Positions 38,568 through 46,683 of a stretch of DNA of 64,000 bases are shown here, piece after piece (position 1 is the stretch's first letter; each line of letters starts with the position of its first letter). A program made the position numbers and the translations under genes. The notes under the pieces were generated by a model, which worked only from the letters and a program-made list of their open reading frames with translations, was not told where the DNA came from and made no database searches. The stretch lies in the IMG/VR virus record IMGVR_UViG_3300030339_000003, positions 62,001-126,000 of that record; one strand, given 5' to 3'.

Positions 38568-39494
38568 ATGGAAACTGTTAATGACGCTACGGCGCATAAC
38601 CACGCGGTGGTTTTGAACTACATAGGTAACCTCTGGTTAGAATTCAGTTCCCAGGTACCTAGTGAACACATAGCGTTATATGAACGTGGTATCGCTACTG
38701 TTTTATTTGCTTACCCAGATTCACTGATGCCTTCTCAAATTATTGAACTGTTGAGCGACGAAACATTGGCGCCAGAAGATCGCGGCATGGCACTGCGTTA
38801 TGTTTTACTCGACCAGTTAGTTGATATAATCAATAAGATGGGCGTTACGTTAAATAAAGATTTTGTTGAAGTTAAACACTTAACAGAATTTTTAAATATG
38901 GCTGAGTTCTTTTACGTGTGCTCAGAAATAGAAGATGCTTACAATACAATCTTACCGTTGCTGTTAGCGTCTGATAACGCACCTAAATATCGTTTAATCG
39001 GTTGTTTGGGTAAAGCCTTCTTTTTTGAAAATGAAGACCCTGATGTTTCAGAATACGAATGTCTTATTGATGACGTAGCGGAGTCAACGTTAAAAGCGTT
39101 AGCCGATGCAATTACCCAAGAAGACACTTCGGACGTCCCACCTGATTCCGTTATACTTCGCTTGAAAGCCAACCAAGCAATTTATGGCGAAACACTGGCG
39201 TATCAGTACGTTAGAAAAGGTGGGTCTTTGTGTAATGCCTTAGAAACGTATTTGAGCTATTTCCGTCAACAACTTAATGCACTGTTAAATGAAGACGGGA
39301 TTGAATACACAGTTCAATACGGTAAAGACATTATTGCTTTACATCTCATTAGTGACCTTAATGATTCTCAAATTGTCGACAAACTGTTAACGTTCTTTGA
39401 CGGTCGTGTAGACAACATTGCTGCTGTATTCCAAATTGAGAAATTAGTTAAGACATTGGTGTTGGGACAGGATTCTACTGATGAACAAGATTGA
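38568..39494 (+). CDS. Conserved protein coupled to vRNAP beta' (phiKZ gp79-like by synteny)
   Basis: 308-aa acidic ORF with AAGG RBS, overlapping the next start. Confidence 0.55.
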   Translation: METVNDATAHNHAVVLNYIGNLWLEFSSQVPSEHIALYERGIATVLFAYPDSLMPSQIIELLSDETLAPEDRGMALRYVLLDQLVDIINKMGVTLNKDFVEVKHLTEFLNMAEFFYVCSEIEDAYNTILPLLLASDNAPKYRLIGCLGKAFFFENEDPDVSEYECLIDDVAESTLKALADAITQEDTSDVPPDSVILRLKANQAIYGETLAYQYVRKGGSLCNALETYLSYFRQQLNALLNEDGIEYTVQYGKDIIALHLISDLNDSQIVDKLLTFFDGRVDNIAAVFQIEKLVKTLVLGQDSTDEQD

Positions 39495-40776
39495 TTTCTT
39501 AAAAGCATCATTTGCTAATCGCGCTTACAATAATAAGGAATACATGGTATCCCTTATTACGATTGGTTTTGATGACCCGGAAAATAAAGCAATCCTCTCA
39601 CCTCTTCCTTATTGTGTATGGATTGAAGACAACAAGTATCATTTCAACGATGAGAACAAAGTAGAACACATCTTAGAAGGTTCTGTCACTGAACCTGTCT
39701 TTATGATGGATACCTTGTTATCGTTGCCTCATGAATTCCATCCGGTATTAGATGCGGATACTGAAACAACTTTTGGTATCTTCCTCTTTAACGTGGTGTT
39801 GTTCTATGAAACTGTAGGCAAACTGATTCCTTATTTAAATAAAGAATTAACTAAGGATAATATCAAGCCTTGGATTTCTGAATTAATGTGTGATGAATTA
39901 CCAGGCATACCTATTCCAGAAGGTAAGGCGGGTATTAAGAAAGTCTTGCAGATATCGCGTAACGCTAACTATCTTGAAGGCATATTGGTTCATATCGTCA
40001 AGTGTGGTTCTCAAGACTCATTAACAATCAGTCCGGCTATTCTTAAACGTAAAGCGGAATTGATTAAAGAACACAAAGATCATTTGACCGACCCTATTGT
40101 ATTCAACAACATTGTTGAAGAACTCGTTAATATGGACATGGAAATTCAAAAGAAAGGCGCATCTAATACTTTCTATATTTCCAAAGACTATATCAGTAAC
40201 TGCCGTAAACGTATGTTCATGGTGTTTGGTATCGAGTTCAATAGCGAAACAGGCCAATGGGTTCCTTTATTAGATCCACTGACTGAAGGCTGGGATCCTA
40301 ATCTCTTAACTGATTACATCAACACCACTATCGAAGGTTCTTATAACCGCGGTAAAGCAACAGGTGAAGGTGGTGCTCGCGTTAAAGATATTCTGCGTGT
40401 TATGGGTTCGAGTCATGTGTCAGAAGAAGACTGTGGGTCTATTGTCACAGAACAAATCGATATCCGCGAATACAACCGTAGTCAATGGGTGGGTGCGTTT
40501 ATATTGTTGGCCAATAAGCCTACGTTGTTGACTAATGAACTCAGCAAGAAACTGCTAGGTAAAACAGTAGATGTACGTGTACCGCAGTTCTGCTTAACAA
40601 CTGATGGTAACTACTGTAAGATTTGTTTAGGTTCCGGGTTAGGCAAGTACTCTACTCGTTTAGCATCTGACACGGTTAAGGTACCAACCACGTTCATGTT
40701 AACGAGAATGAAAGCGAGTCACATATCAGGTAGTAGTAACGCCAAAATGAATCTTGAATATGTGTTTAGAACATAA
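39481..40776 (+). CDS. Virion RNA polymerase beta' subunit, C-terminal part (phiKZ gp80-like)
   Basis: Bridge-helix-like GKATGEGGARVKD, VSEEDCGS, and Zn site CLTTDGNYCKICLG. Confidence 0.85.
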   Translation: MNKIDFLKASFANRAYNNKEYMVSLITIGFDDPENKAILSPLPYCVWIEDNKYHFNDENKVEHILEGSVTEPVFMMDTLLSLPHEFHPVLDADTETTFGIFLFNVVLFYETVGKLIPYLNKELTKDNIKPWISELMCDELPGIPIPEGKAGIKKVLQISRNANYLEGILVHIVKCGSQDSLTISPAILKRKAELIKEHKDHLTDPIVFNNIVEELVNMDMEIQKKGASNTFYISKDYISNCRKRMFMVFGIEFNSETGQWVPLLDPLTEGWDPNLLTDYINTTIEGSYNRGKATGEGGARVKDILRVMGSSHVSEEDCGSIVTEQIDIREYNRSQWVGAFILLANKPTLLTNELSKKLLGKTVDVRVPQFCLTTDGNYCKICLGSGLGKYSTRLASDTVKVPTTFMLTRMKASHISGSSNAKMNLEYVFRT

Positions 40777-40814
40777 AAAATAAACAGCATTAATGCTTTT
40801 ATAGGAATCTTTAA

Positions 40815-41666
40815 ATGAGTGATACCGAACTTATTAGTACGGGCAGTATGGATTACGTATCAGGAACTGAATCCTACGCTATGCGTTATTTCCAAGGCGT
40901 ACTGTTCAGTAATGGCATTATTAAATTATCCGATGTAAACGGCATGGAAGGATTGTTCAGTTCCGCTGCTGCCAAAATCAAACAATTTATTAGTTGGATT
41001 TATAAACAACTTAAATCTTTATGGAATATTTTCTTCGGTCCCAGAGCAACCGTTAAAGTAACTGGAGCCGATGCAGTAAACATGTGGGATACAAAGTTTA
41101 CTCTAAAAGAAGGGGCAGCAGAAAAATTAAGCGGTCTACTTAAAGTTGAACATACTAAACTTGAATCTGCATTGGCGCGTTATTTTTCTAAACAAACCGA
41201 ATGGAAAATTAACGTACTTAAATTAGGTGAAGAAATAGGGTTTAATCATTTAAAAGTTGATAAGGATGAGTTGGCTGCCAAATATTGGGAGTCTATCAGT
41301 AAAAGAATGCAAATCAATATTGAAAATATTGAAAAGTCTTCTACCTTACGAGGTTTCGTTAATAATTTTAATGATCATATCACGCTTACGGAAAACTTGT
41401 TTAAAAACATCATGCTGCACGCTCCAGGATACATTGATGATTTTAAGAATAACGAGTTTGCCGAATCTGATAAAGTAGAACAATCTGTTTTAAACGATTC
41501 AGAACGTATTAAAACTGAAGAGCTTTATAACAAGTTCGTGGCTTTGATGATAAGTGGTAACAACTTACGATTAGCAGTCATGAAAGATCTTAACCACTCG
41601 CTTAGTATGTTGGATCAACAAATAATGGCTTTCAACAGACGCGATTACTTTGTAACAAAAAAATAA
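40815..41666 (+). CDS. Internal head protein paralogue outside the main cluster
   Basis: SGTESYAMRYFQGVLFSNG...NGMEG followed by LFSSAAAKIKQFISWIYKQLKSLWNIFFG. Confidence 0.7.
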   Translation: MSDTELISTGSMDYVSGTESYAMRYFQGVLFSNGIIKLSDVNGMEGLFSSAAAKIKQFISWIYKQLKSLWNIFFGPRATVKVTGADAVNMWDTKFTLKEGAAEKLSGLLKVEHTKLESALARYFSKQTEWKINVLKLGEEIGFNHLKVDKDELAAKYWESISKRMQINIENIEKSSTLRGFVNNFNDHITLTENLFKNIMLHAPGYIDDFKNNEFAESDKVEQSVLNDSERIKTEELYNKFVALMISGNNLRLAVMKDLNHSLSMLDQQIMAFNRRDYFVTKK

Positions 41667-41677
41667 ATAAATTATAC

Positions 41678-41709
41678 TAACTACTACTCCCGCAAGGGAG
41701 TAGTAGTTA
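41678..41709. terminator. Bidirectional hairpin, identical to 8851-8882
   Basis: TAACTACTACTCCC-GCAA-GGGAGTAGTAGTTA between convergent units. Confidence 0.85.
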
Positions 41710-41726
41710 AGTTATATGAATGCAAG

Positions 41727-41903
41727 TTATTTTTGAGATGTACGTAAATGGACATCTTCAGCTTTAATTTCTGGGCGCGCTCGTTGTTCCATTGGGATGT
41801 AACGATAACCAATAGTGCCATCTTCACGAGTATATTTTTCATGAGTACGGAACTGCTGTGTAAAAACAAACTCTTTCTTCATCGTCAATTTACTTAAAGA
41901 CAT
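41727..41903 (-). CDS. Small hypothetical protein (58 aa), below the track cut-off
   Basis: AAGGA RBS, ATG at 41903, MSLSKLTMKKEFVFTQQFRTHEKY...RTSQK*; fits the operon spacing. Confidence 0.65.
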   Translation of the reverse strand: MSLSKLTMKKEFVFTQQFRTHEKYTREDGTIGYRYIPMEQRARPEIKAEDVHLRTSQK

Positions 41904-41912
41904 TACAATTCC

Positions 41913-42287
41913 TTAGTGTTTACACGTGTAAATATAGGCGTCATTTTCTTTATCAAAAGAAACACTGAAATCTGGATGACGTTGGATAACGCGGAGAGCC
42001 ACGTGGCCTTGGAAAGGTATTACTGACGGGCTTTCGGGAATGATTAATTTTGAAACCAATTCTTTTTCAACAATAACTTGATTTAACATTACCGTACTAT
42101 GATCGACATGACGTTCACTGTGTAAAGTGAATTTAAAAGTATGATTGCGAATAGAATGATGGGTTGATTTTTCTTCCCAAGTTGCATTCTTTGCTTCTTC
42201 AACAATTAATTCAATGACACTATTAATTAAGTTGCTAAAGATTAAATGTTTGGGAGGAACTTCAAAAGCTTTCATTGGCTCTACCAT
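41913..42287 (-). CDS. Small accessory orphan (array member F)
   Basis: 124 aa, start overlaps the upstream stop. Confidence 0.65.
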   Translation of the reverse strand: MVEPMKAFEVPPKHLIFSNLINSVIELIVEEAKNATWEEKSTHHSIRNHTFKFTLHSERHVDHSTVMLNQVIVEKELVSKLIIPESPSVIPFQGHVALRVIQRHPDFSVSFDKENDAYIYTCKH

Positions 42288-42709
42288 ACCCAGTAGTATC
42301 CTTTTTCATTACATTTGATTAATGTGTTAGTTAAACCGGAACGAGAATAAGCTGCATTAAAGATAAAGTCTTTAACATAATCTTTATTACGATCAAAATG
42401 TTTAGAATTGACTTTGATTGTTTGACAACATACTTCTCGCCCAAAATGATGGTCGTATTCTTTCCACACGTAAGCAGTAATTTCAATACGAGGGCTTATA
42501 ACATAAAGATGAGTTAACACCTTTCCGTTCGTAAGTTCACCAGGCGATTGTCTATAACGTAGATAATTACTTAAAGCAATTTCATAAATCTGTTGAGTAA
42601 TTTCTATTTCGACGTTACACTTTAATATTTCATTAAAATCGGCAACAGTCAATGCCGCTGTTGCTGGGTCATAAATAGTTGTTATATCGGGTAAAATGTT
42701 TTTAGACAT
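42281..42709 (-). CDS. Small accessory orphan (array member E), paralogue of 42715-43032
   Basis: ITAYVWKE...EVCCQTI...DYVKDFI...NEKGYYWVW. Confidence 0.7.
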   Translation of the reverse strand: MSKNILPDITTIYDPATAALTVADFNEILKCNVEIEITQQIYEIALSNYLRYRQSPGELTNGKVLTHLYVISPRIEITAYVWKEYDHHFGREVCCQTIKVNSKHFDRNKDYVKDFIFNAAYSRSGLTNTLIKCNEKGYYWVW

Positions 42710-42714
42710 ATCGA

Positions 42715-43032
42715 TTACCAGGTTAAATAGATACCATTATGATCACTACGTACAGTAACCCCTTTAAACTGATTCAAACACATCATAATGAATTCGTTTA
42801 AATAGTTGATACCATCGCCTCCCTTATTAGGAGAGGCTGTGATACCGCAACACACTTCGTCTGCCGTCAATGATTTCCATACATGACACGTCAAGCCAAC
42901 ATTACCCACTTGATATGTCTCAATAACGGAATCTTTACCTTTTTTACGTTCTAATGTTGCAACGCTGGGATATTCTTTTAACATGGAATAGTAAAGCTGA
43001 ATCATTGTGGATGTAACGCTTTTGTCTCCCAT
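42715..43032 (-). CDS. Small accessory orphan (array member D), paralogue of 42281-42709
   Basis: LTCHVWKS...EVCCGIT...NYLNEFI...DHNGIYLTW; ATG at 43032 lies 1 nt after the upstream TAA. Confidence 0.7.
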   Translation of the reverse strand: MGDKSVTSTMIQLYYSMLKEYPSVATLERKKGKDSVIETYQVGNVGLTCHVWKSLTADEVCCGITASPNKGGDGINYLNEFIMMCLNQFKGVTVRSDHNGIYLTW

Positions 43033-43033
43033 G

Positions 43034-43378
43034 TTAATCCCACAACTTAATAAAGAGTTTGTTTTCAGTAATGATGGCGATTTCATAATAAGGCTTACTG
43101 ACACGCGCTAATGAACTCAACGTTGCCATATAAGTTTTGCCATCTTCTACATCATCAAACATGGCATCAATAGTCGCTATTTCATTTTCTAAATAACGTT
43201 CTTCCATACCAAAATAACATTGCGGGATAGTGTAATTGTCTACTACTACCTTACGGACATCTCGATTAAATCCGTTACCCGTAATTACAGAATCAATACG
43301 ATTTAACAAAAGCTCAAATAAGGCGTTTGATTGTTCGCCCGTAATATCTTCTGGGAAATCATACTTAACAATTTCCAT
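43034..43378 (-). CDS. Small accessory orphan (array member C)
   Basis: Start at 43378 inferred from TAATG stop/start overlap (the track starts at 43444). Confidence 0.65.
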   Translation of the reverse strand: MEIVKYDFPEDITGEQSNALFELLLNRIDSVITGNGFNRDVRKVVVDNYTIPQCYFGMEERYLENEIATIDAMFDDVEDGKTYMATLSSLARVSKPYYEIAIITENKLFIKLWD

Positions 43379-43800
43379 TACTTGCTTAGGAACGATTTCA
43401 GTAACCACTTTTTCGTTGTCAGTGTTTTTAGTTCTATTTTCCATATTGGGAAACTCGCCAGTACGTTGATAGTTGCACGATTAAGTTCTAAGAATTCTTT
43501 AATAAATGAACGCGAACCTATTTCAAATTCATTAACGAAATCTAAGTAACTGGTTGATTGATAGTTCAACATTGACGACCAAGATTCTTCACCTAAGAAT
43601 CTGTTCGCGAACTGTTGTTGTATAACCAAAGAATTCTTAGTTATGTGAGTATCCAACTGTTCAAAGAAGTAATCGTCATCAAATGTTGCTGCACATTCCC
43701 CACGCAATATACTGACCTGCAATACATCACAAGCAAAATTAGTGACATCGTCAGTATAACCTTCAGGAATGCGTAATACATCACTGTATATTTTTTCCAC
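43378..43800 (-). CDS. Small accessory orphan (array member B)
   Basis: 140 aa, coupled on both sides. Confidence 0.65.
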   Translation of the reverse strand: MEKIYSDVLRIPEGYTDDVTNFACDVLQVSILRGECAATFDDDYFFEQLDTHITKNSLVIQQQFANRFLGEESWSSMLNYQSTSYLDFVNEFEIGSRSFIKEFLELNRATINVLASFPIWKIELKTLTTKKWLLKSFLSK

Positions 43801-44206
43801 TTGACGCCTTAGTAATTTTAATTTTACCGCTGAGGGTTAATGTTACGTAAGTTCCGGTCAAGTACTTAACACGTATGTTAAAAGCTTGATCTTTATTAAG
43901 TGTTTCAAAATGGTCATTGATGTCGTGTTTTAAATGCACACGGCGAACTTCTGTCGACCAAAACAAAGGACACTGTTCTTCAATAACAAATTGAGCACGG
44001 AAGCTGACGAATTCTTCCCCAGAGAAAATAATATCAACAACGGGATCATTAGATATTCTTAACGAACCATTATAATGAGGATTAACTTTATAATATTTGA
44101 AATGATCTTTAACGATGGAATGAACGACATCGATCTTATTTAATCCAATTGTGCGATAATGATCGGCGTAATGATTACGTAATACACGTTTTGTTTTAAA
44201 CATCAT
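43781..44206 (-). CDS. Small accessory orphan (array member A), first gene of the early operon
   Basis: AAGGGG RBS then ATG ATG at 44206/44203; about 40 bp downstream of TATATTAC. Confidence 0.65.
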   Translation of the reverse strand: MMFKTKRVLRNHYADHYRTIGLNKIDVVHSIVKDHFKYYKVNPHYNGSLRISNDPVVDIIFSGEEFVSFRAQFVIEEQCPLFWSTEVRRVHLKHDINDHFETLNKDQAFNIRVKYLTGTYVTLTLSGKIKITKASSGKNIQ

Positions 44207-44245
44207 AACCCCTTTTAAAAAATAAATAGTTATCAATACTAATAA

Positions 44246-44253
44246 GTAATATA
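44246..44253 (-). promoter_or_regulatory. Early promoter TATATTAC
   Basis: Exact match to the phiKZ early consensus, between a terminator and the operon start. Confidence 0.7.
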
Positions 44254-44270
44254 GTGTTAAAATATAATAA

Positions 44271-44298
44271 CTTACTAACTGGTTGCCCAGTTAGTAAG
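44271..44298 (-). terminator. Hairpin terminator
   Basis: 12-bp stem CTTACTAACTGG / CCAGTTAGTAAG; GCAA loop on the minus strand. Confidence 0.8.
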
Positions 44299-44303
44299 GA
44301 GTG

Positions 44304-44636
44304 TTATTTTTTAGTAATGATGTAATCGCTACGGAACATGTCAGCTGGAGTTGGGTGCCATACGTCTTGATCAAGCACATTTGAAGATGTCCACATAATT
44401 AAAACATCCATAGTTCCAAAATCACTAACGGCATTTCTCTTTGTAACTTCATGTTCTTTATCAGTCCAACTCACAGATTTAATACTAATTGAACCCCTAG
44501 GGAAATCTAACAAGAAATTCAAAGCAGTACCAAAGGTTACATATTTCAATGTTCCTTTTGCTTCGAGTTCAGCAATGAGTTTCTTATCGATTTTGTCTTT
44601 TACAGTTTTTAATGAAGGTTTATAAGGACTAAGCAT
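44304..44636 (-). CDS. DUF2829/Tad2-like protein 2 (candidate immune-signal sponge)
   Basis: VTFGTALNFL...SVSW...VWHPTPADMFRSDYII; start at 44636 with GGAG RBS. Confidence 0.6.
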   Translation of the reverse strand: MLSPYKPSLKTVKDKIDKKLIAELEAKGTLKYVTFGTALNFLLDFPRGSISIKSVSWTDKEHEVTKRNAVSDFGTMDVLIMWTSSNVLDQDVWHPTPADMFRSDYIITKK

Positions 44637-44913
44637 CAGCAAGCTCCAATACCCATTCAGTGTCAAAAAGATCTGCGGTAGACGGGTGCCACGGCAGCAC
44701 TAAGCCATTAGAAAAAGTTATTACGGCCATTCGGAGTTTAAATTCTTCACTATACTGAATAGTGACGCGTGCTGTTTCATTACTCCAATGTTTGCACCAC
44801 ATACTTACTTTACCGGGCAATGCACTAACTAACATTCCCCATGCTTCACTAAATGTTTGTTTTTCTAAGAACTTTTCTTCTTCCAAATACATCATTGTTT
44901 CTAAAGCGGTCAT
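44629..44913 (-). CDS. DUF2829/Tad2-like protein 1 (candidate immune-signal sponge)
   Basis: QTFSEAWGML...GKVSMWCKHW...LPWHPSTADLFDTEWVL. Confidence 0.6.
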   Translation of the reverse strand: MTALETMMYLEEEKFLEKQTFSEAWGMLVSALPGKVSMWCKHWSNETARVTIQYSEEFKLRMAVITFSNGLVLPWHPSTADLFDTEWVLELADA

Positions 44914-45093
44914 TTAAACCTCGTCTACCGGTACATGATTCTTTAATACAATAACTAAAGCCTCTAATTCTTCCAGACTGTAGTCGCCATCAAGCGTTAC
45001 CCGTTCAAGTGTCTGTTGATCCATCCATTTACCAGATTGCTTTATAGTGGCTCTGGCTTGATCGAGTGACATTTGTTTTATTTGCCTTTGCAT
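44914..45093 (-). CDS. Small hypothetical protein (59 aa), below the track cut-off
   Basis: AAGGA RBS; MQRQIKQMSLDQARATIKQSGKW...LDGDYSLEELEALVIVLKNHVPVDEV*; stop abuts the next ATG. Confidence 0.65.
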   Translation of the reverse strand: MQRQIKQMSLDQARATIKQSGKWMDQQTLERVTLDGDYSLEELEALVIVLKNHVPVDEV

Positions 45094-45135
45094 ACATAGT
45101 CCTTATAAGAAGTGAGGCGAACCCCACCCTTATTT

Positions 45136-46683
45136 TTAATACATAAATATGCCGCTATCTACGTTCTGATAACTTAAACTACTTTCTTCAAACAGTTCTT
45201 TACGATAGTGATGATAAGACACATGTTTATCAACATCGTCACACACGGTATAACCAAAGATTAAGTCAACACCGTTATGTAATGGGTTTTTGTTTTCACG
45301 AACACGACCACGCATCTGATAGTTACGTTGGACGGATTTAACGTTATGGAAACTGATACACGTAATTAACCCAGGAATGTCTTTACCTGTACCACAACTG
45401 CCAGGTGTACTAAAGACTATTTCGTGCTTACGGTATTCATCCTTGGTATCAGCTTTACCGCCTTGTTCACCAGTAAACGATATGGCGTCCAGTTCAGGAT
45501 AACGTTTCTTAAGTTCTTCTACCATGAACTTGCAAGTTTCTACTTTAGTAAAGAAGAACAAACATTTGGATTCCGGTTTACGGCGATTAAGATAGTATTC
45601 TCTGAAACACCACAACATCAACTCGATATAGTGTGGACGTAACTTTTTGTTATCCATGATGGATGCTTCAAAAGTCGTGTCATTATAAACACCACGAGCA
45701 GTTGTTCGTATTTTGTTTTGCCTGGTATTAATACGATAATGGATTGCTTTGATGTGCATGTGTGCGGTATACACGGTATCTTTTAAACGAACGCTTTCAG
45801 GGAACAAGTACTTATAGATTTTGTTCGTGAAAGGATCTTCCGCTTTAAAGGTTGCTGTGTTACCGATTGTTTTCTTAATGTTACCAAACATCAAGGACAA
45901 ATAAACCTGATGAATGGATTCATGCACTTCATCGTAAATACGTAAGCCAGGACGGAACAACTTATAAACATCATCCAGCGTTGGATAGGTTTCATCCAAA
46001 CGTGACTTACGTACCATGACGTCAATTTTACTTAATGAAATAACTAAGATCTTGGGATTGATTACCCCAGATTTTAATTGATCCATTAATACGTCTAAAC
46101 CGCCCGCATCTGCCACATGATAATCTTTGGGTTGTAAGTCTAAGAACTTACCACACTCGACATTCCAAATAGGAAGGAAGCGAGCATTACCAATAATGAC
46201 CACACGTTCACCAGCAGCTACAGCAGCATATAAATCTAACCAACCTTTACCTACACCTGTGGCTGCATTATTTAACTTTAACGGCCCGTCGTCGGTCAGG
46301 TAAGGCATCCAGTCGTATTGCTCTGGTTTGTTAGGTTGATCGAATCCTACTTTAAACTTTAATTCAACTTTAATAGGTTCTATTAACGGTTCATCGTCAA
46401 TTAAAATATCGTTGTCACTATAACCACGTTGGGTTATGAAATTCTTTAAGTCGGGTAATAACGTTGAGGTTATACGGAGTTCTGTTTTGTCTTTATTAAA
46501 TCTTGCGAAACGATGCGTTACCCCATAAGTCTGAATCATTGGGTTAGATTCAGAAGGTATCATACCGAACTTAAATAAATGATGGTGACAAAACGGAAGA
46601 AGAATCTTTCGTGCAAATTCTTCGGCATAACCGTGTATTCTCAGGTAGCTATTAGCGACGCTTATCGTACACTTGTATCGCAC
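45136..46683 (-). CDS. SF2 helicase, UvsW-like (phiKZ gp75-like)
   Basis: Motif I AATGVGKG, motif II DEVHE, motif III NTAT, motif VI QMRGRVRE. Confidence 0.85.
   Translation of the reverse strand: MRYKCTISVANSYLRIHGYAEEFARKILLPFCHHHLFKFGMIPSESNPMIQTYGVTHRFARFNKDKTELRITSTLLPDLKNFITQRGYSDNDILIDDEPLIEPIKVELKFKVGFDQPNKPEQYDWMPYLTDDGPLKLNNAATGVGKGWLDLYAAVAAGERVVIIGNARFLPIWNVECGKFLDLQPKDYHVADAGGLDVLMDQLKSGVINPKILVISLSKIDVMVRKSRLDETYPTLDDVYKLFRPGLRIYDEVHESIHQVYLSLMFGNIKKTIGNTATFKAEDPFTNKIYKYLFPESVRLKDTVYTAHMHIKAIHYRINTRQNKIRTTARGVYNDTTFEASIMDNKKLRPHYIELMLWCFREYYLNRRKPESKCLFFFTKVETCKFMVEELKKRYPELDAISFTGEQGGKADTKDEYRKHEIVFSTPGSCGTGKDIPGLITCISFHNVKSVQRNYQMRGRVRENKNPLHNGVDLIFGYTVCDDVDKHVSYHHYRKELFEESSLSYQNVDSGIFMY

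What the first reader, a model, noticed from the sequence alone, without database searches (positions are those of the whole stretch)
41727..44253. Early operon of seven small orphans that looks like a diverged tandem paralogue array
One TATATTAC promoter drives seven tightly coupled ORFs of 58-142 aa ending at the 41678 hairpin. D and E are clear paralogues: LTCHVWKS/ITAYVWKE, EVCCGIT/EVCCQTI, NYLNEFI/DYVKDFI and DHNGIYLTW/NEKGYYWVW. A, B, C and F end in a similar predicted helix-strand-turn-strand pattern (KYLTGTYVTLTLSGKIKI; ASFPIWKIEL...KWLLKSF; VSKPYYEIAIITENKLFIKLW; QRHPDFSVSFDKENDAYIYTC). An early-expressed, duplicated and rapidly diverging family beside Tad2-like genes is what a host-takeover or counter-defence gene accordion would look like. 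The conserved VWK and EVCC residues may form a ligand or metal site. Homology beyond D/E is pattern-level only.
Basis: partly seen in the sequence, partly recalled or inferred. Interest (0 to 1): 0.72.

Follow-up and report, generated by a model that had tools for sequence, protein, structure and literature searches.

The report
Conserved early small-gene cassette, jumbo phage
Seven small genes behind one early-type promoter in an uncultured phiKZ-like jumbo phage form a cassette of separate small-protein families of unknown function, most of them conserved in related phages, with only one old duplication (D and E).

Summary
The window comes from a 231-kb phiKZ-like (chimallivirus-type) jumbo phage assembled from peat metagenomes. 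Seven tightly packed minus-strand ORFs (A-G, 41727-44206) lie between a terminator hairpin plus a phiKZ-type early-promoter motif and a strong terminator. All seven are intact and under purifying selection in a relative.

Only D and E are demonstrable paralogues. Their duplication is old: D-type and E-type form two subfamilies, and single-copy relatives keep one or the other. Four metagenome runs show no copy-number variation.

A, B, C, the D/E family and G are not orphans. Each has orthologues in the same order in a clade of uncultured relatives. C, and probably B, belong to families found at the same position after the helicase gene in the cultured phages EL and RisingSun. Profile comparisons link none of the families to each other.

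AlphaFold models of A and E show the same order of elements (long helix, strand meander, helix, hairpin), but this is not proof of a common fold. The VWK and EVCC residues are not conserved across the D/E family.

Function is unknown. My best guess is early host-directed or infection-establishing small proteins. This is ordinary phage dark matter: well delimited, modest interest.

The parts
44271..44298 (-). Terminator-like hairpin that closes the upstream helicase/U/T2/T1 unit, directly before the promoter
   Evidence: 12-bp stem followed by a T-rich tail. The same hairpin-then-promoter layout occurs upstream of the A orthologue in L001, L040, L041, L042, L046 and L048.
44240..44265 (-). Early-type promoter motif (ATTTTAACAC-TATATTAC-TTATTAGTA); core at 44253-44246
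   Evidence: It belongs to a genome-wide motif family: 21 of 23 cores on the minus strand, about 13 with the extended consensus. It matches the published predicted early-promoter consensus of phiKZ and 201phi2-1 (PMC7058600 Table 2). PMC7598289 states that such motifs are vRNAP early promoters. The transcription start was not measured.
43781..44206 (-). Gene A, 141 aa, basic (pI 9.6); conserved PLFWS..RR..L...IN motif
   Evidence: Orthologues at the same position in L001, L040, L041, L042, L045, L046, L048 and L049. dN/dS 0.23. AF2 model pLDDT 85, pTM 0.79. The 5' two thirds are a local divergence hot spot.
43378..43800 (-). Gene B, 140 aa, acidic (pI 4.8); probable member of the X1 family (first small gene after the helicase gene: EL gp41, RisingSun gp46)
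   Evidence: Orthologues at 34-56% identity in L040-L049. hhalign against the X1 profile gives E 6e-4 over 119 columns; hmmsearch gives only 0.085. dN/dS 0.11.
43034..43378 (-). Gene C, 114 aa (frame open to 43444, overlapping B); acidic; member of the X2 family (second small gene after the helicase gene: EL gp42, RisingSun gp47)
   Evidence: hhalign probability 96.5%, E 8e-10. The X2 HMM hits C at 2e-8. Alignment A6. dN/dS 0.05. The overlap with B is conserved in relatives.
42715..43032 (-). Gene D, 105 aa, D-type member of the D/E family
   Evidence: Paralogue of E. D-type clade in the tree. dN/dS 0.08.
42281..42709 (-). Gene E, 142 aa, E-type member of the D/E family
   Evidence: The exhaustive profile search finds remote family members, and every member whose context was read lies in this slot. 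AF2 model pLDDT 78, pTM 0.71. dN/dS 0.33.
41913..42287 (-). Gene F, 124 aa; the only relative found is in L001
   Evidence: Intact in L001 at 78% identity, dN/dS 0.27. No Pfam, PHROG or NCBIfam hit. No profile link to any other family. The Atlas model is poor, pLDDT 0.41.
41727..41903 (-). Gene G, 58 aa, basic
   Evidence: 95% identical in L001. A 40%-identical orthologue lies directly after the E-type gene in L045. dN/dS 0.38.
41677..41710 (-). Strong terminator hairpin at the point where the operon and the 283-aa ORF on the other strand converge
   Evidence: 15-bp stem, -23.5 kcal/mol, z -6.0. The sequence is repeated elsewhere, shown by a depth spike and loose contig ends.
44304..44913 (-). 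Context: T1 (44304-44666) and T2 (44629-44913), tandem Tad2-like paralogues upstream of the promoter
   Evidence: T1 against T2: E 7e-7, z 11.6. Pfam PF11195 scores 17.4 and 19.8 bits, below the cut-off of 25; orthologues in L040 (32.6) and L048 (26.2) are above it.
45136..46683 (-). Context: helicase that marks one side of the slot
   Evidence: About 42% identical to the helicases of EL, RisingSun and others. Synteny shown.
39481..40776 (+). Context: convergent RNA polymerase beta-like subunit gene that marks the other side of the slot
   Evidence: phrog_2962, E 4e-126. Conserved at this position in all relatives.

Best explanation
Shown: A-G is a self-contained transcription unit. It is bounded by a terminator hairpin, a phiKZ-type early-promoter motif and a downstream terminator. 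It sits in the variable slot between the nvRNAP/helicase gene block and a convergent RNAP beta-like gene of an uncultured phiKZ-like jumbo phage. It is a cassette of separate small-protein families. A, B, C, D/E and G each have orthologues in a fixed order (Tad2-like, A, B, C, D/E-type, ...) in a clade of metagenomic relatives; F was found only in L001. C, and probably B, continue a small-gene set that follows the helicase gene in cultured phages such as EL and RisingSun. I call its three families X1, X2 and X3, in gene order. D and E come from one ancient duplication, and other lineages lost one copy or the other.

Inferred: the virion RNA polymerase transcribes the unit in the first minutes of infection. 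The overlapping reading frames couple translation. The products act as individual small binding proteins, basic (A, G) or acidic (B, C), that prepare the cell for infection through host takeover or counter-defence. I do not think they form a dosage-driven accordion. I put the functional part at about 0.35-0.4. The anatomical and evolutionary part is far firmer.
For: - Anatomy.
- Early-promoter identity by motif. The hairpin-then-promoter layout upstream of A is conserved in 6 of 8 relatives.
- The ORFs are coding: all seven are intact in L001, with dN/dS 0.05-0.38.
- Synteny of the slot: 12 cultured phages and 22 metagenome loci.
- Orthologue families in fixed order.
- C belongs to X2. B is similar to X1.
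- D/E paralogy and its age.
- No other copies in the genome and no copy-number variants.
- Family-specific charge is conserved.
Against: - No transcript data exist for this uncultured phage, so 'early' rests on a motif alone.
- No family has a characterised homologue. Pfam, PHROGs, NCBIfam, PDB sequence and fold searches were all negative, so the function is guesswork.
- B and C are strongly conserved (dN/dS 0.05-0.11) and linked to the nvRNAP and helicase genes across distant phages. That fits a housekeeping infection role at least as well as an arms-race role.
- The B-X1 link is weak (hmmsearch E 0.085).
Confidence: 0.6

Rival explanations
1. One reading: the whole operon is one duplicated, fast-diverging family (a counter-defence or takeover gene accordion) in which A, B, C and F are diverged copies of the D/E type.
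For: - D/E is a true duplication.
- The AF2 models of A and E have the same order of elements: long helix, 3-4 strand meander, helix, hairpin.
- A and E share 6 of their top-50 weak PDB neighbours: 3k10, 6lbs, 1ug8, 8i79, 6tps, 6qvf.
- F's low-confidence Atlas model shares pseudopilin-like and 98-aa viral-cluster neighbours with E.
- Tandem duplicates are frequent in this slot in other phages.
- A has a local replacement hot spot.
Against: - No profile-profile signal between any two families, all E above 0.16. No pairwise signal beyond chance.
- Each family keeps its own charge class, and A, B, C, D/E and G keep their own orthologues in fixed order.
- C, and probably B, predate the split from EL-like phages.
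- B looks largely helical by eye.
- The D/E duplication is ancient, with 26% identity and two old clades.
- No copy-number change in four runs.
- All genes are under purifying selection.
Confidence: 0.1
2. The cassette, at least B and C (X1/X2), encodes accessory factors of the phage's own early machinery. Examples would be helpers of nvRNAP or helicase assembly, or of the move from the early infection vesicle to the phage nucleus. On this view the proteins are not host-directed.
For: - X1, X2 and X3 keep a strict position directly after the nvRNAP beta/beta' and helicase genes across EL-, RisingSun-, OBP-, pEt-SU-, Miami- and pTD1-type phages and 22 metagenome loci.
- dN/dS of B and C is low, 0.11 and 0.05.
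- The X1/X2 overlap is conserved, which suggests fixed stoichiometry.
Against: - phiKZ-type phages (SL2) lack the three-gene set at this position, so it is not part of the universal core.
- Sequences diverge so fast between clades that positional orthologues score only E 0.01-0.05 in hhalign, which is unusual for machinery parts.
- In the window phage the cassette has its own terminator and promoter, separate from the helicase unit.
Confidence: 0.25
3. Some of the seven ORFs are not genes but chance open frames in AT-rich DNA.
For: There are no database annotations. Gene callers skipped B in L001 and C in L042, L045, L046 and L048.
Against: All seven are intact at 78-95% protein identity (A 46%) with dN/dS 0.05-0.38 in L001. 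A, B, C, D/E and G are conserved at 20-58% identity in distant relatives. The skipped ORFs are present and homologous when read directly.
Confidence: 0.02

Closest known systems
vRNAP-dependent early operons of phiKZ-like phages (phiKZ, 201phi2-1, OBP, EL), which carry a TATATTAC-type early promoter
   Same: The same core motif and extended upstream T-rich/TTTCAA element. The same phage type, with split RNAP beta/beta' genes and a conserved helicase. The same layout of a terminator hairpin followed by a promoter and a run of small genes of unknown function.
   Different: There are no transcript data for this phage. The proteins encoded here have no detectable counterpart in phiKZ itself; the slot in the phiKZ-type phage SL2 holds other tiny ORFs.
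The small-gene set after the helicase gene in Pseudomonas phage EL (gp41, gp42, gp43) and Erwinia phage RisingSun (gp46, gp47, gp48); all are annotated as hypothetical proteins
   Same: The same slot and orientation. C is a clear homologue of gp42/gp47. B is a probable homologue of gp41/gp46. Both are acidic, and the first two genes overlap in both cases.
   Different: The window phage adds A before this pair, the D/E pair after it, and F and G. It also gives the cassette its own promoter. No homology between F and gp43/gp48 could be shown.
Tad2 (Thoeris anti-defence 2, Pfam PF11195)
   Same: Tad2-like genes (T1, T2) lie directly upstream, and a Tad2-like gene precedes the A orthologue in the relatives whose upstream gene could be read (L040, L041, L042, L045, L048).
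   Different: A-G themselves have no similarity to Tad2. T1 and T2 lie outside the promoter-to-terminator unit, and the window copies score below the Pfam cut-off.
Type II secretion pseudopilin GspI and type IV pilin fold
   Different: The scores are below the tool's stated noise level. The sequence shows no hydrophobic N-terminal segment and no prepilin cleavage motif. This is a resemblance of shape only.
Poxvirus-type gene accordions (recent tandem amplification under selection)
   Same: Two tandem paralogues in an early, possibly host-directed locus.
   Different: The copies are 26% identical and belong to two old subfamilies. There is no copy-number polymorphism, and both copies are under purifying selection.

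Membership tests
phiKZ-type early (vRNAP) promoter | AT-rich conserved roughly 10-nt motif (TATATTAC type) upstream of presumed early operons, repeated through the genome | tested here: met
   The core plus extended consensus occurs at about 13 sites, including 44240-44265. It matches the published consensus.
phiKZ-type early (vRNAP) promoter | Transcription start about 10 nt downstream, active early and independent of host RNAP | not testable with these tools
   (kind 'any', which by the tool's own caveat is no search for RNA) listed only metagenome DNA-type runs; no RNA-specific search was made.
X2 family (EL gp42 / RisingSun gp47), for C | Significant profile similarity over most of the length | tested here: met
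   hhalign 96.5%, E 8e-10, 95 columns. HMM E 2e-8.
X2 family (EL gp42 / RisingSun gp47), for C | Second small gene after the helicase gene, overlapping the first | tested here: met
   Synteny. In the window clade the Tad2-like gene(s) (plus U in the window and L040) and A are interposed first.
X1 family (EL gp41 / RisingSun gp46), for B | Significant profile similarity | tested here: inconclusive
   hhalign E 6e-4 over 119 collinear columns, probability 29%. hmmsearch E 0.085.
X3 family (EL gp43 / RisingSun gp48), for F | Profile similarity | tested here: not met
   No hit. An early 26-column match at E 0.04 did not hold up with richer profiles.
   Only D/E are related. All other pairs have E above 0.16.
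   A and E have the same order of elements and share weak neighbours.
Gene accordion | Recent near-identical copies and copy-number polymorphism | tested here: not met
   26% identity, two old clades, no joints in four runs, no extra copies in the genome.
Tad2-like (PF11195), for A-G | Match to the Pfam model | tested here: not met
   No hit at E up to 1.
Tad2-like (PF11195), for the neighbours T1 and T2 | Score at or above the gathering cut-off of 25 bits | tested here: inconclusive
   The window copies score 17.4 and 19.8 bits. Orthologues in L040 (32.6) and L048 (26.2) pass.
Cys-based metal or ligand site in D/E | Family-wide conservation of the CC pair and of VWK | tested here: not met
   The only invariant residues are G137 and Y139. 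The CC pair is replaced by CF, GC or AL, and VWK by ISL, VFT, IWV and others.
Type IV pilin / pseudopilin, for E | Hydrophobic N-terminal helix with a prepilin leader, and fold similarity above noise | tested here: not met

The most novel reading that the evidence does not exclude
The conserved order Tad2-like, A, B, C, D/E-type, with overlapping frames and its own early promoter, marks a multi-protein early module shared by a whole branch of chimalliviruses. B and C would be the ancient X1/X2 core, also present in EL, RisingSun, OBP and others. The parts would work together, for example as a counter-defence or takeover complex assembled in the cytoplasm before the phage nucleus forms. A's replaceable N-terminal part would be the host-specific adaptor.
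Probability: 0.15. Interest if true: 0.6.

Novelty: new member of a known kind. Interest (0 to 1): 0.3.

Why it matters
Nucleus-forming jumbo phages express many small early proteins of unknown role in the minutes before their protective compartment exists. This locus defines at least five such families with clear boundaries, orthologue sets and conserved order: A, B/X1, C/X2, D/E and G. Two of them now have usable structure models. It also links an uncultured clade to tractable cultured phages (EL, RisingSun), where the B/C homologues can be tested. In addition, it shows that a pattern-level 'paralogue array' call from raw sequence was mostly an effect of small alpha+beta proteins ending in a hairpin.

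Tried and rejected
- Megablast and tblastn of the operon and of E against 50,697 phage records found no match. A scan of viral contigs with E found none, and with the RNAP subunit found only Vibrio phage USC-1.
- Pfam, PHROGs and NCBIfam gave nothing significant for A-G. Rfam found nothing in 40000-46000.
- A weak tblastn hit of D elsewhere in the genome (C1:217196-217435, E 0.016) was not recovered by the family HMM, so I treat it as chance.
- An apparent X1-X2 link in single-linkage clustering came from a fused or over-long ORF in L039 and was rejected.
- Complex prediction of B with C gave no verdict (score 0.00). It counts neither for nor against binding.
- Foldseek and VIA searches of models E and A against PDB, BFVD, AFDB clusters and the Atlas returned only sub-threshold matches.
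- PDB sequence-profile searches for four families found nothing.
- Atlas look-ups added little. A and F have only poor models there, and B has a feature-based lead to DUF2764 at 0.88, below the tool's trust level.
- A home-made hydrophobic-periodicity secondary-structure predictor agreed with the AF2 models at only 43-52% and was discarded.
- The search for RNA evidence listed only DNA-type metagenome runs. It was run with kind 'any', which the tool says is no search for RNA.
Full report
**Source and setting.** The window is bases 62001-126000 of a single 231,366-bp contig. The helicase at 45136-46683(-) is about 42% identical to those of Pseudomonas phage EL, Erwinia phages RisingSun and Joad, and other jumbo phages. 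Neighbouring genes match the split RNA polymerase beta/beta' families of phiKZ-like phages: phrog_2962, phrog_3015 and phrog_3295, with E values from 1e-126 to 1e-194. Public runs holding this DNA are peat, biofilm, food and freshwater metagenomes. The source is therefore an uncultured chimallivirus-type jumbo phage.

**Checking the observation.**
- Seven co-oriented ORFs lie on the minus strand: A 43781-44206, B 43378-43800 (GTG start), C 43034-43378 (frame open up to 43444), D 42715-43032, E 42281-42709, F 41913-42287 and G 41727-41903.
- TATATTAC sits at 44253-44246.
- TATATTAC occurs 23 times in the genome, 21 of them on the minus strand. About 13 copies share an extended consensus, roughly TTTCARRYCTATATTACTTAGGTG, and the copy upstream of A is one of them.
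- This consensus equals the predicted early-promoter consensus tabulated for phiKZ, 201phi2-1, OBP and EL (PMC7058600).
- A review states that such motifs, wherever tested, are the early promoters read by the virion RNA polymerase (PMC7598289).
- A 12-bp hairpin (44271-44298) precedes the promoter. A 15-bp hairpin (41677-41710; -23.5 kcal/mol, z -6.0) follows G.
- The transcription-unit anatomy is therefore real. 'Early' is inferred from the motif, not measured.

**Are the ORFs genes?** Relative L001 (JGI metagenome, about 86% nucleotide identity) carries all seven ORFs intact.

| Gene | dN/dS, window vs L001 |
|---|---|
| A | 0.23 |
| B | 0.11 |
| C | 0.05 |
| D | 0.08 |
| E | 0.33 |
| F | 0.27 |
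| G | 0.38 |
| flanking core genes | 0.02-0.07 |

All seven are coding and under purifying selection, though less constrained than the core genes.

**Paralogy.**
- All-against-all BLASTP and a Smith-Waterman shuffle test single out D/E (E 2e-5 to 3e-4, z 7.7) and the upstream pair T1/T2 (z 11.6). No other pair exceeds chance.
- The D/E alignment covers the whole of D.
- An exhaustive profile search with D plus E found remote members of 100-135 aa, and a second word-based search added more.
- Across the family only G137 and Y139 are invariant. The EVCC and VWK residues vary, and one member has no cysteine there. The proposed metal or ligand site is therefore not supported.
- A maximum-likelihood tree splits the family into an E-type and a D-type clade with 91/91 support. 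The window phage, L001, L002 and L040 carry both types. L041 and L045 keep only the E-type. L042, L046, L048 and L049 keep only the D-type (contexts).
- The duplication is therefore old and was followed by differential loss.
- The genome holds no further copy of any of the six families.
- Contigs from four runs show no joints, deletions or duplications across 40700-44900. This does not look like an accordion.

**The other genes are not orphans.** The loci that carry D/E-family genes are all chimallivirus fragments with the same order: RNAP, RNAP, helicase, a Tad2-like gene, then orthologues of A, B and C, then a D/E-type gene.
- L040 has A at 53% identity, B at 56%, C at 58%, a D-type gene at 43% and an E-type gene at 31%.
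- L045 has a G orthologue at 40% identity directly after its E-type gene.
- Gene callers missed C in L042, L045, L046 and L048. It is present there and overlaps both neighbours by 65-70 nt.
- The hairpin-then-promoter layout upstream of A is kept in six of eight relatives.

**Link to cultured phages.** In EL, RisingSun, Miami, pEt-SU, pTD1, OBP, Sureiya, pAEv1810, BUCTxx100 and ZPAH34, and in most of the metagenome loci whose slot could be read, the slot between the helicase and the convergent RNAP gene holds a set of three small genes. Aeromonas phage D3 has two, and FishSpeaker's slot differs. I call the three families X1, X2 and X3, in gene order.
- The C family matches X2 at hhalign probability 96.5%, E 8e-10, and the X2 HMM hits C at 2e-8.
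- The B family matches X1 at E 6e-4 over 119 collinear columns. This is plausible but not proven.
- F shows no link to X3.
- Among the A, B, C, D/E, F and G family profiles, no pair scores better than E 0.16.
- Charge is family-specific and conserved: A has pI 9.0-9.9, B 4.5-5.3, C 4.4-5.5 and G 8.9-9.7.

These results argue against a single diverging family. They favour a cassette of distinct proteins.

**Structure.**
- AF2 model of E (18-sequence alignment, pLDDT 78, pTM 0.71): helix 22-54, strands 64-72, 75-86 and 91-101, helix 111-122, hairpin 130-141.
- AF2 model of A (14 sequences, pLDDT 85, pTM 0.79): helix 2-35, four strands between 39 and 76, helix 86-104, hairpin 109-130.
- The order of elements is the same in both, and six of the top-50 weak PDB neighbours are shared.
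- F's Atlas model is poor (pLDDT 0.41) but lists pseudopilin-like neighbours too.
- I could not superpose the models directly or model B, C and F myself. A common fold for A, D/E and F therefore remains possible but unshown.

**Interpretation.** The locus is a conserved cassette driven by an early-type promoter. It holds at least five small-protein families of unknown function and sits in a slot that tolerates insertions. Other phages hold HNH endonucleases, NUDIX genes and their own tandem duplicates there.

Its likely timing, its position next to Tad2-like genes and the local replacement hot spot in A make an early host-directed role the most likely reading. In that hot spot, 44201-43938 is only 37-53% identical to L001 while the flanks are 85-95% identical; run X3's contig aligns from G through B and then leaves the window at 43800.

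The tight conservation of B and C next to the nvRNAP and helicase genes keeps an own-machinery role alive. Both readings are inferences, and no family has a characterised relative.

**Verdict.** It is a new member of a known kind (early small-gene operons of phiKZ-like phages) and of modest interest. Its main value is a clean set of families and cultured-phage homologues for experiments.

Noticed in passing
window 40815-41666 (+): A 283-aa ORF between the RNAP beta-like gene and the operon terminator is missing as a clean indel in relative L001, which goes straight from the RNAP gene to G. Its N-terminus weakly matches phrog_21850 (unknown function).
   Followed up: partly
window 41678-41709: The terminator hairpin is a repeated sequence. 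Contig depth doubles or triples there, and several contigs from runs X1-X3 end or branch at it. Similar GC-rich hairpins flank other TATATTAC sites of the genome.
   Followed up: partly
whole genome (G000:C1), e.g. window 13821, 57927, 60975: 21 of 23 TATATTAC cores lie on the minus strand, and about 13 share a 25-nt extended consensus. This amounts to a ready-made map of presumed early promoters of this phage.
   Followed up: partly
window 43938-44201 (5' two thirds of gene A): This is a local divergence hot spot: 37-53% nucleotide identity to L001, with a 13-codon indel, while the promoter and downstream genes are 85-95% identical. A contig from run X3 also stops aligning here. It looks like a replaced module.
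   Followed up: partly
window 43378-43444; L042 7651-8070; L046 6648-7070: The C reading frame stays open about 65 nt into the end of B in every relative. In some relatives it also runs about 70 nt into the D/E-type gene. Between the window and L001, the overlap evolves as if only the B frame were constrained.
   Followed up: partly
window 44304-44913: T1 and T2 are overlapping tandem paralogues with weak Tad2-like matches. Relatives have one copy, or a 216-227-aa protein with the Tad2-like part at its C-terminus.
   Followed up: partly
L009 9010-10059; L006 9040-11736; L012 8679-9759; L021, L022, L027 slots: Independent tandem duplications occur in the same helicase-to-RNAP slot of other jumbo phages: Sureiya, pEt-SU, FishSpeaker, and X1a/X1b pairs in metagenome loci.
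   Followed up: no
L004 9001-11283 (EL helicase) and the FishSpeaker, VP4B and phiKT1028 homologues: The helicase homologue matches in two pieces and is 700-1100 bases longer than in the window phage. This suggests an inserted element (intein or intron) in those phages.
   Followed up: no
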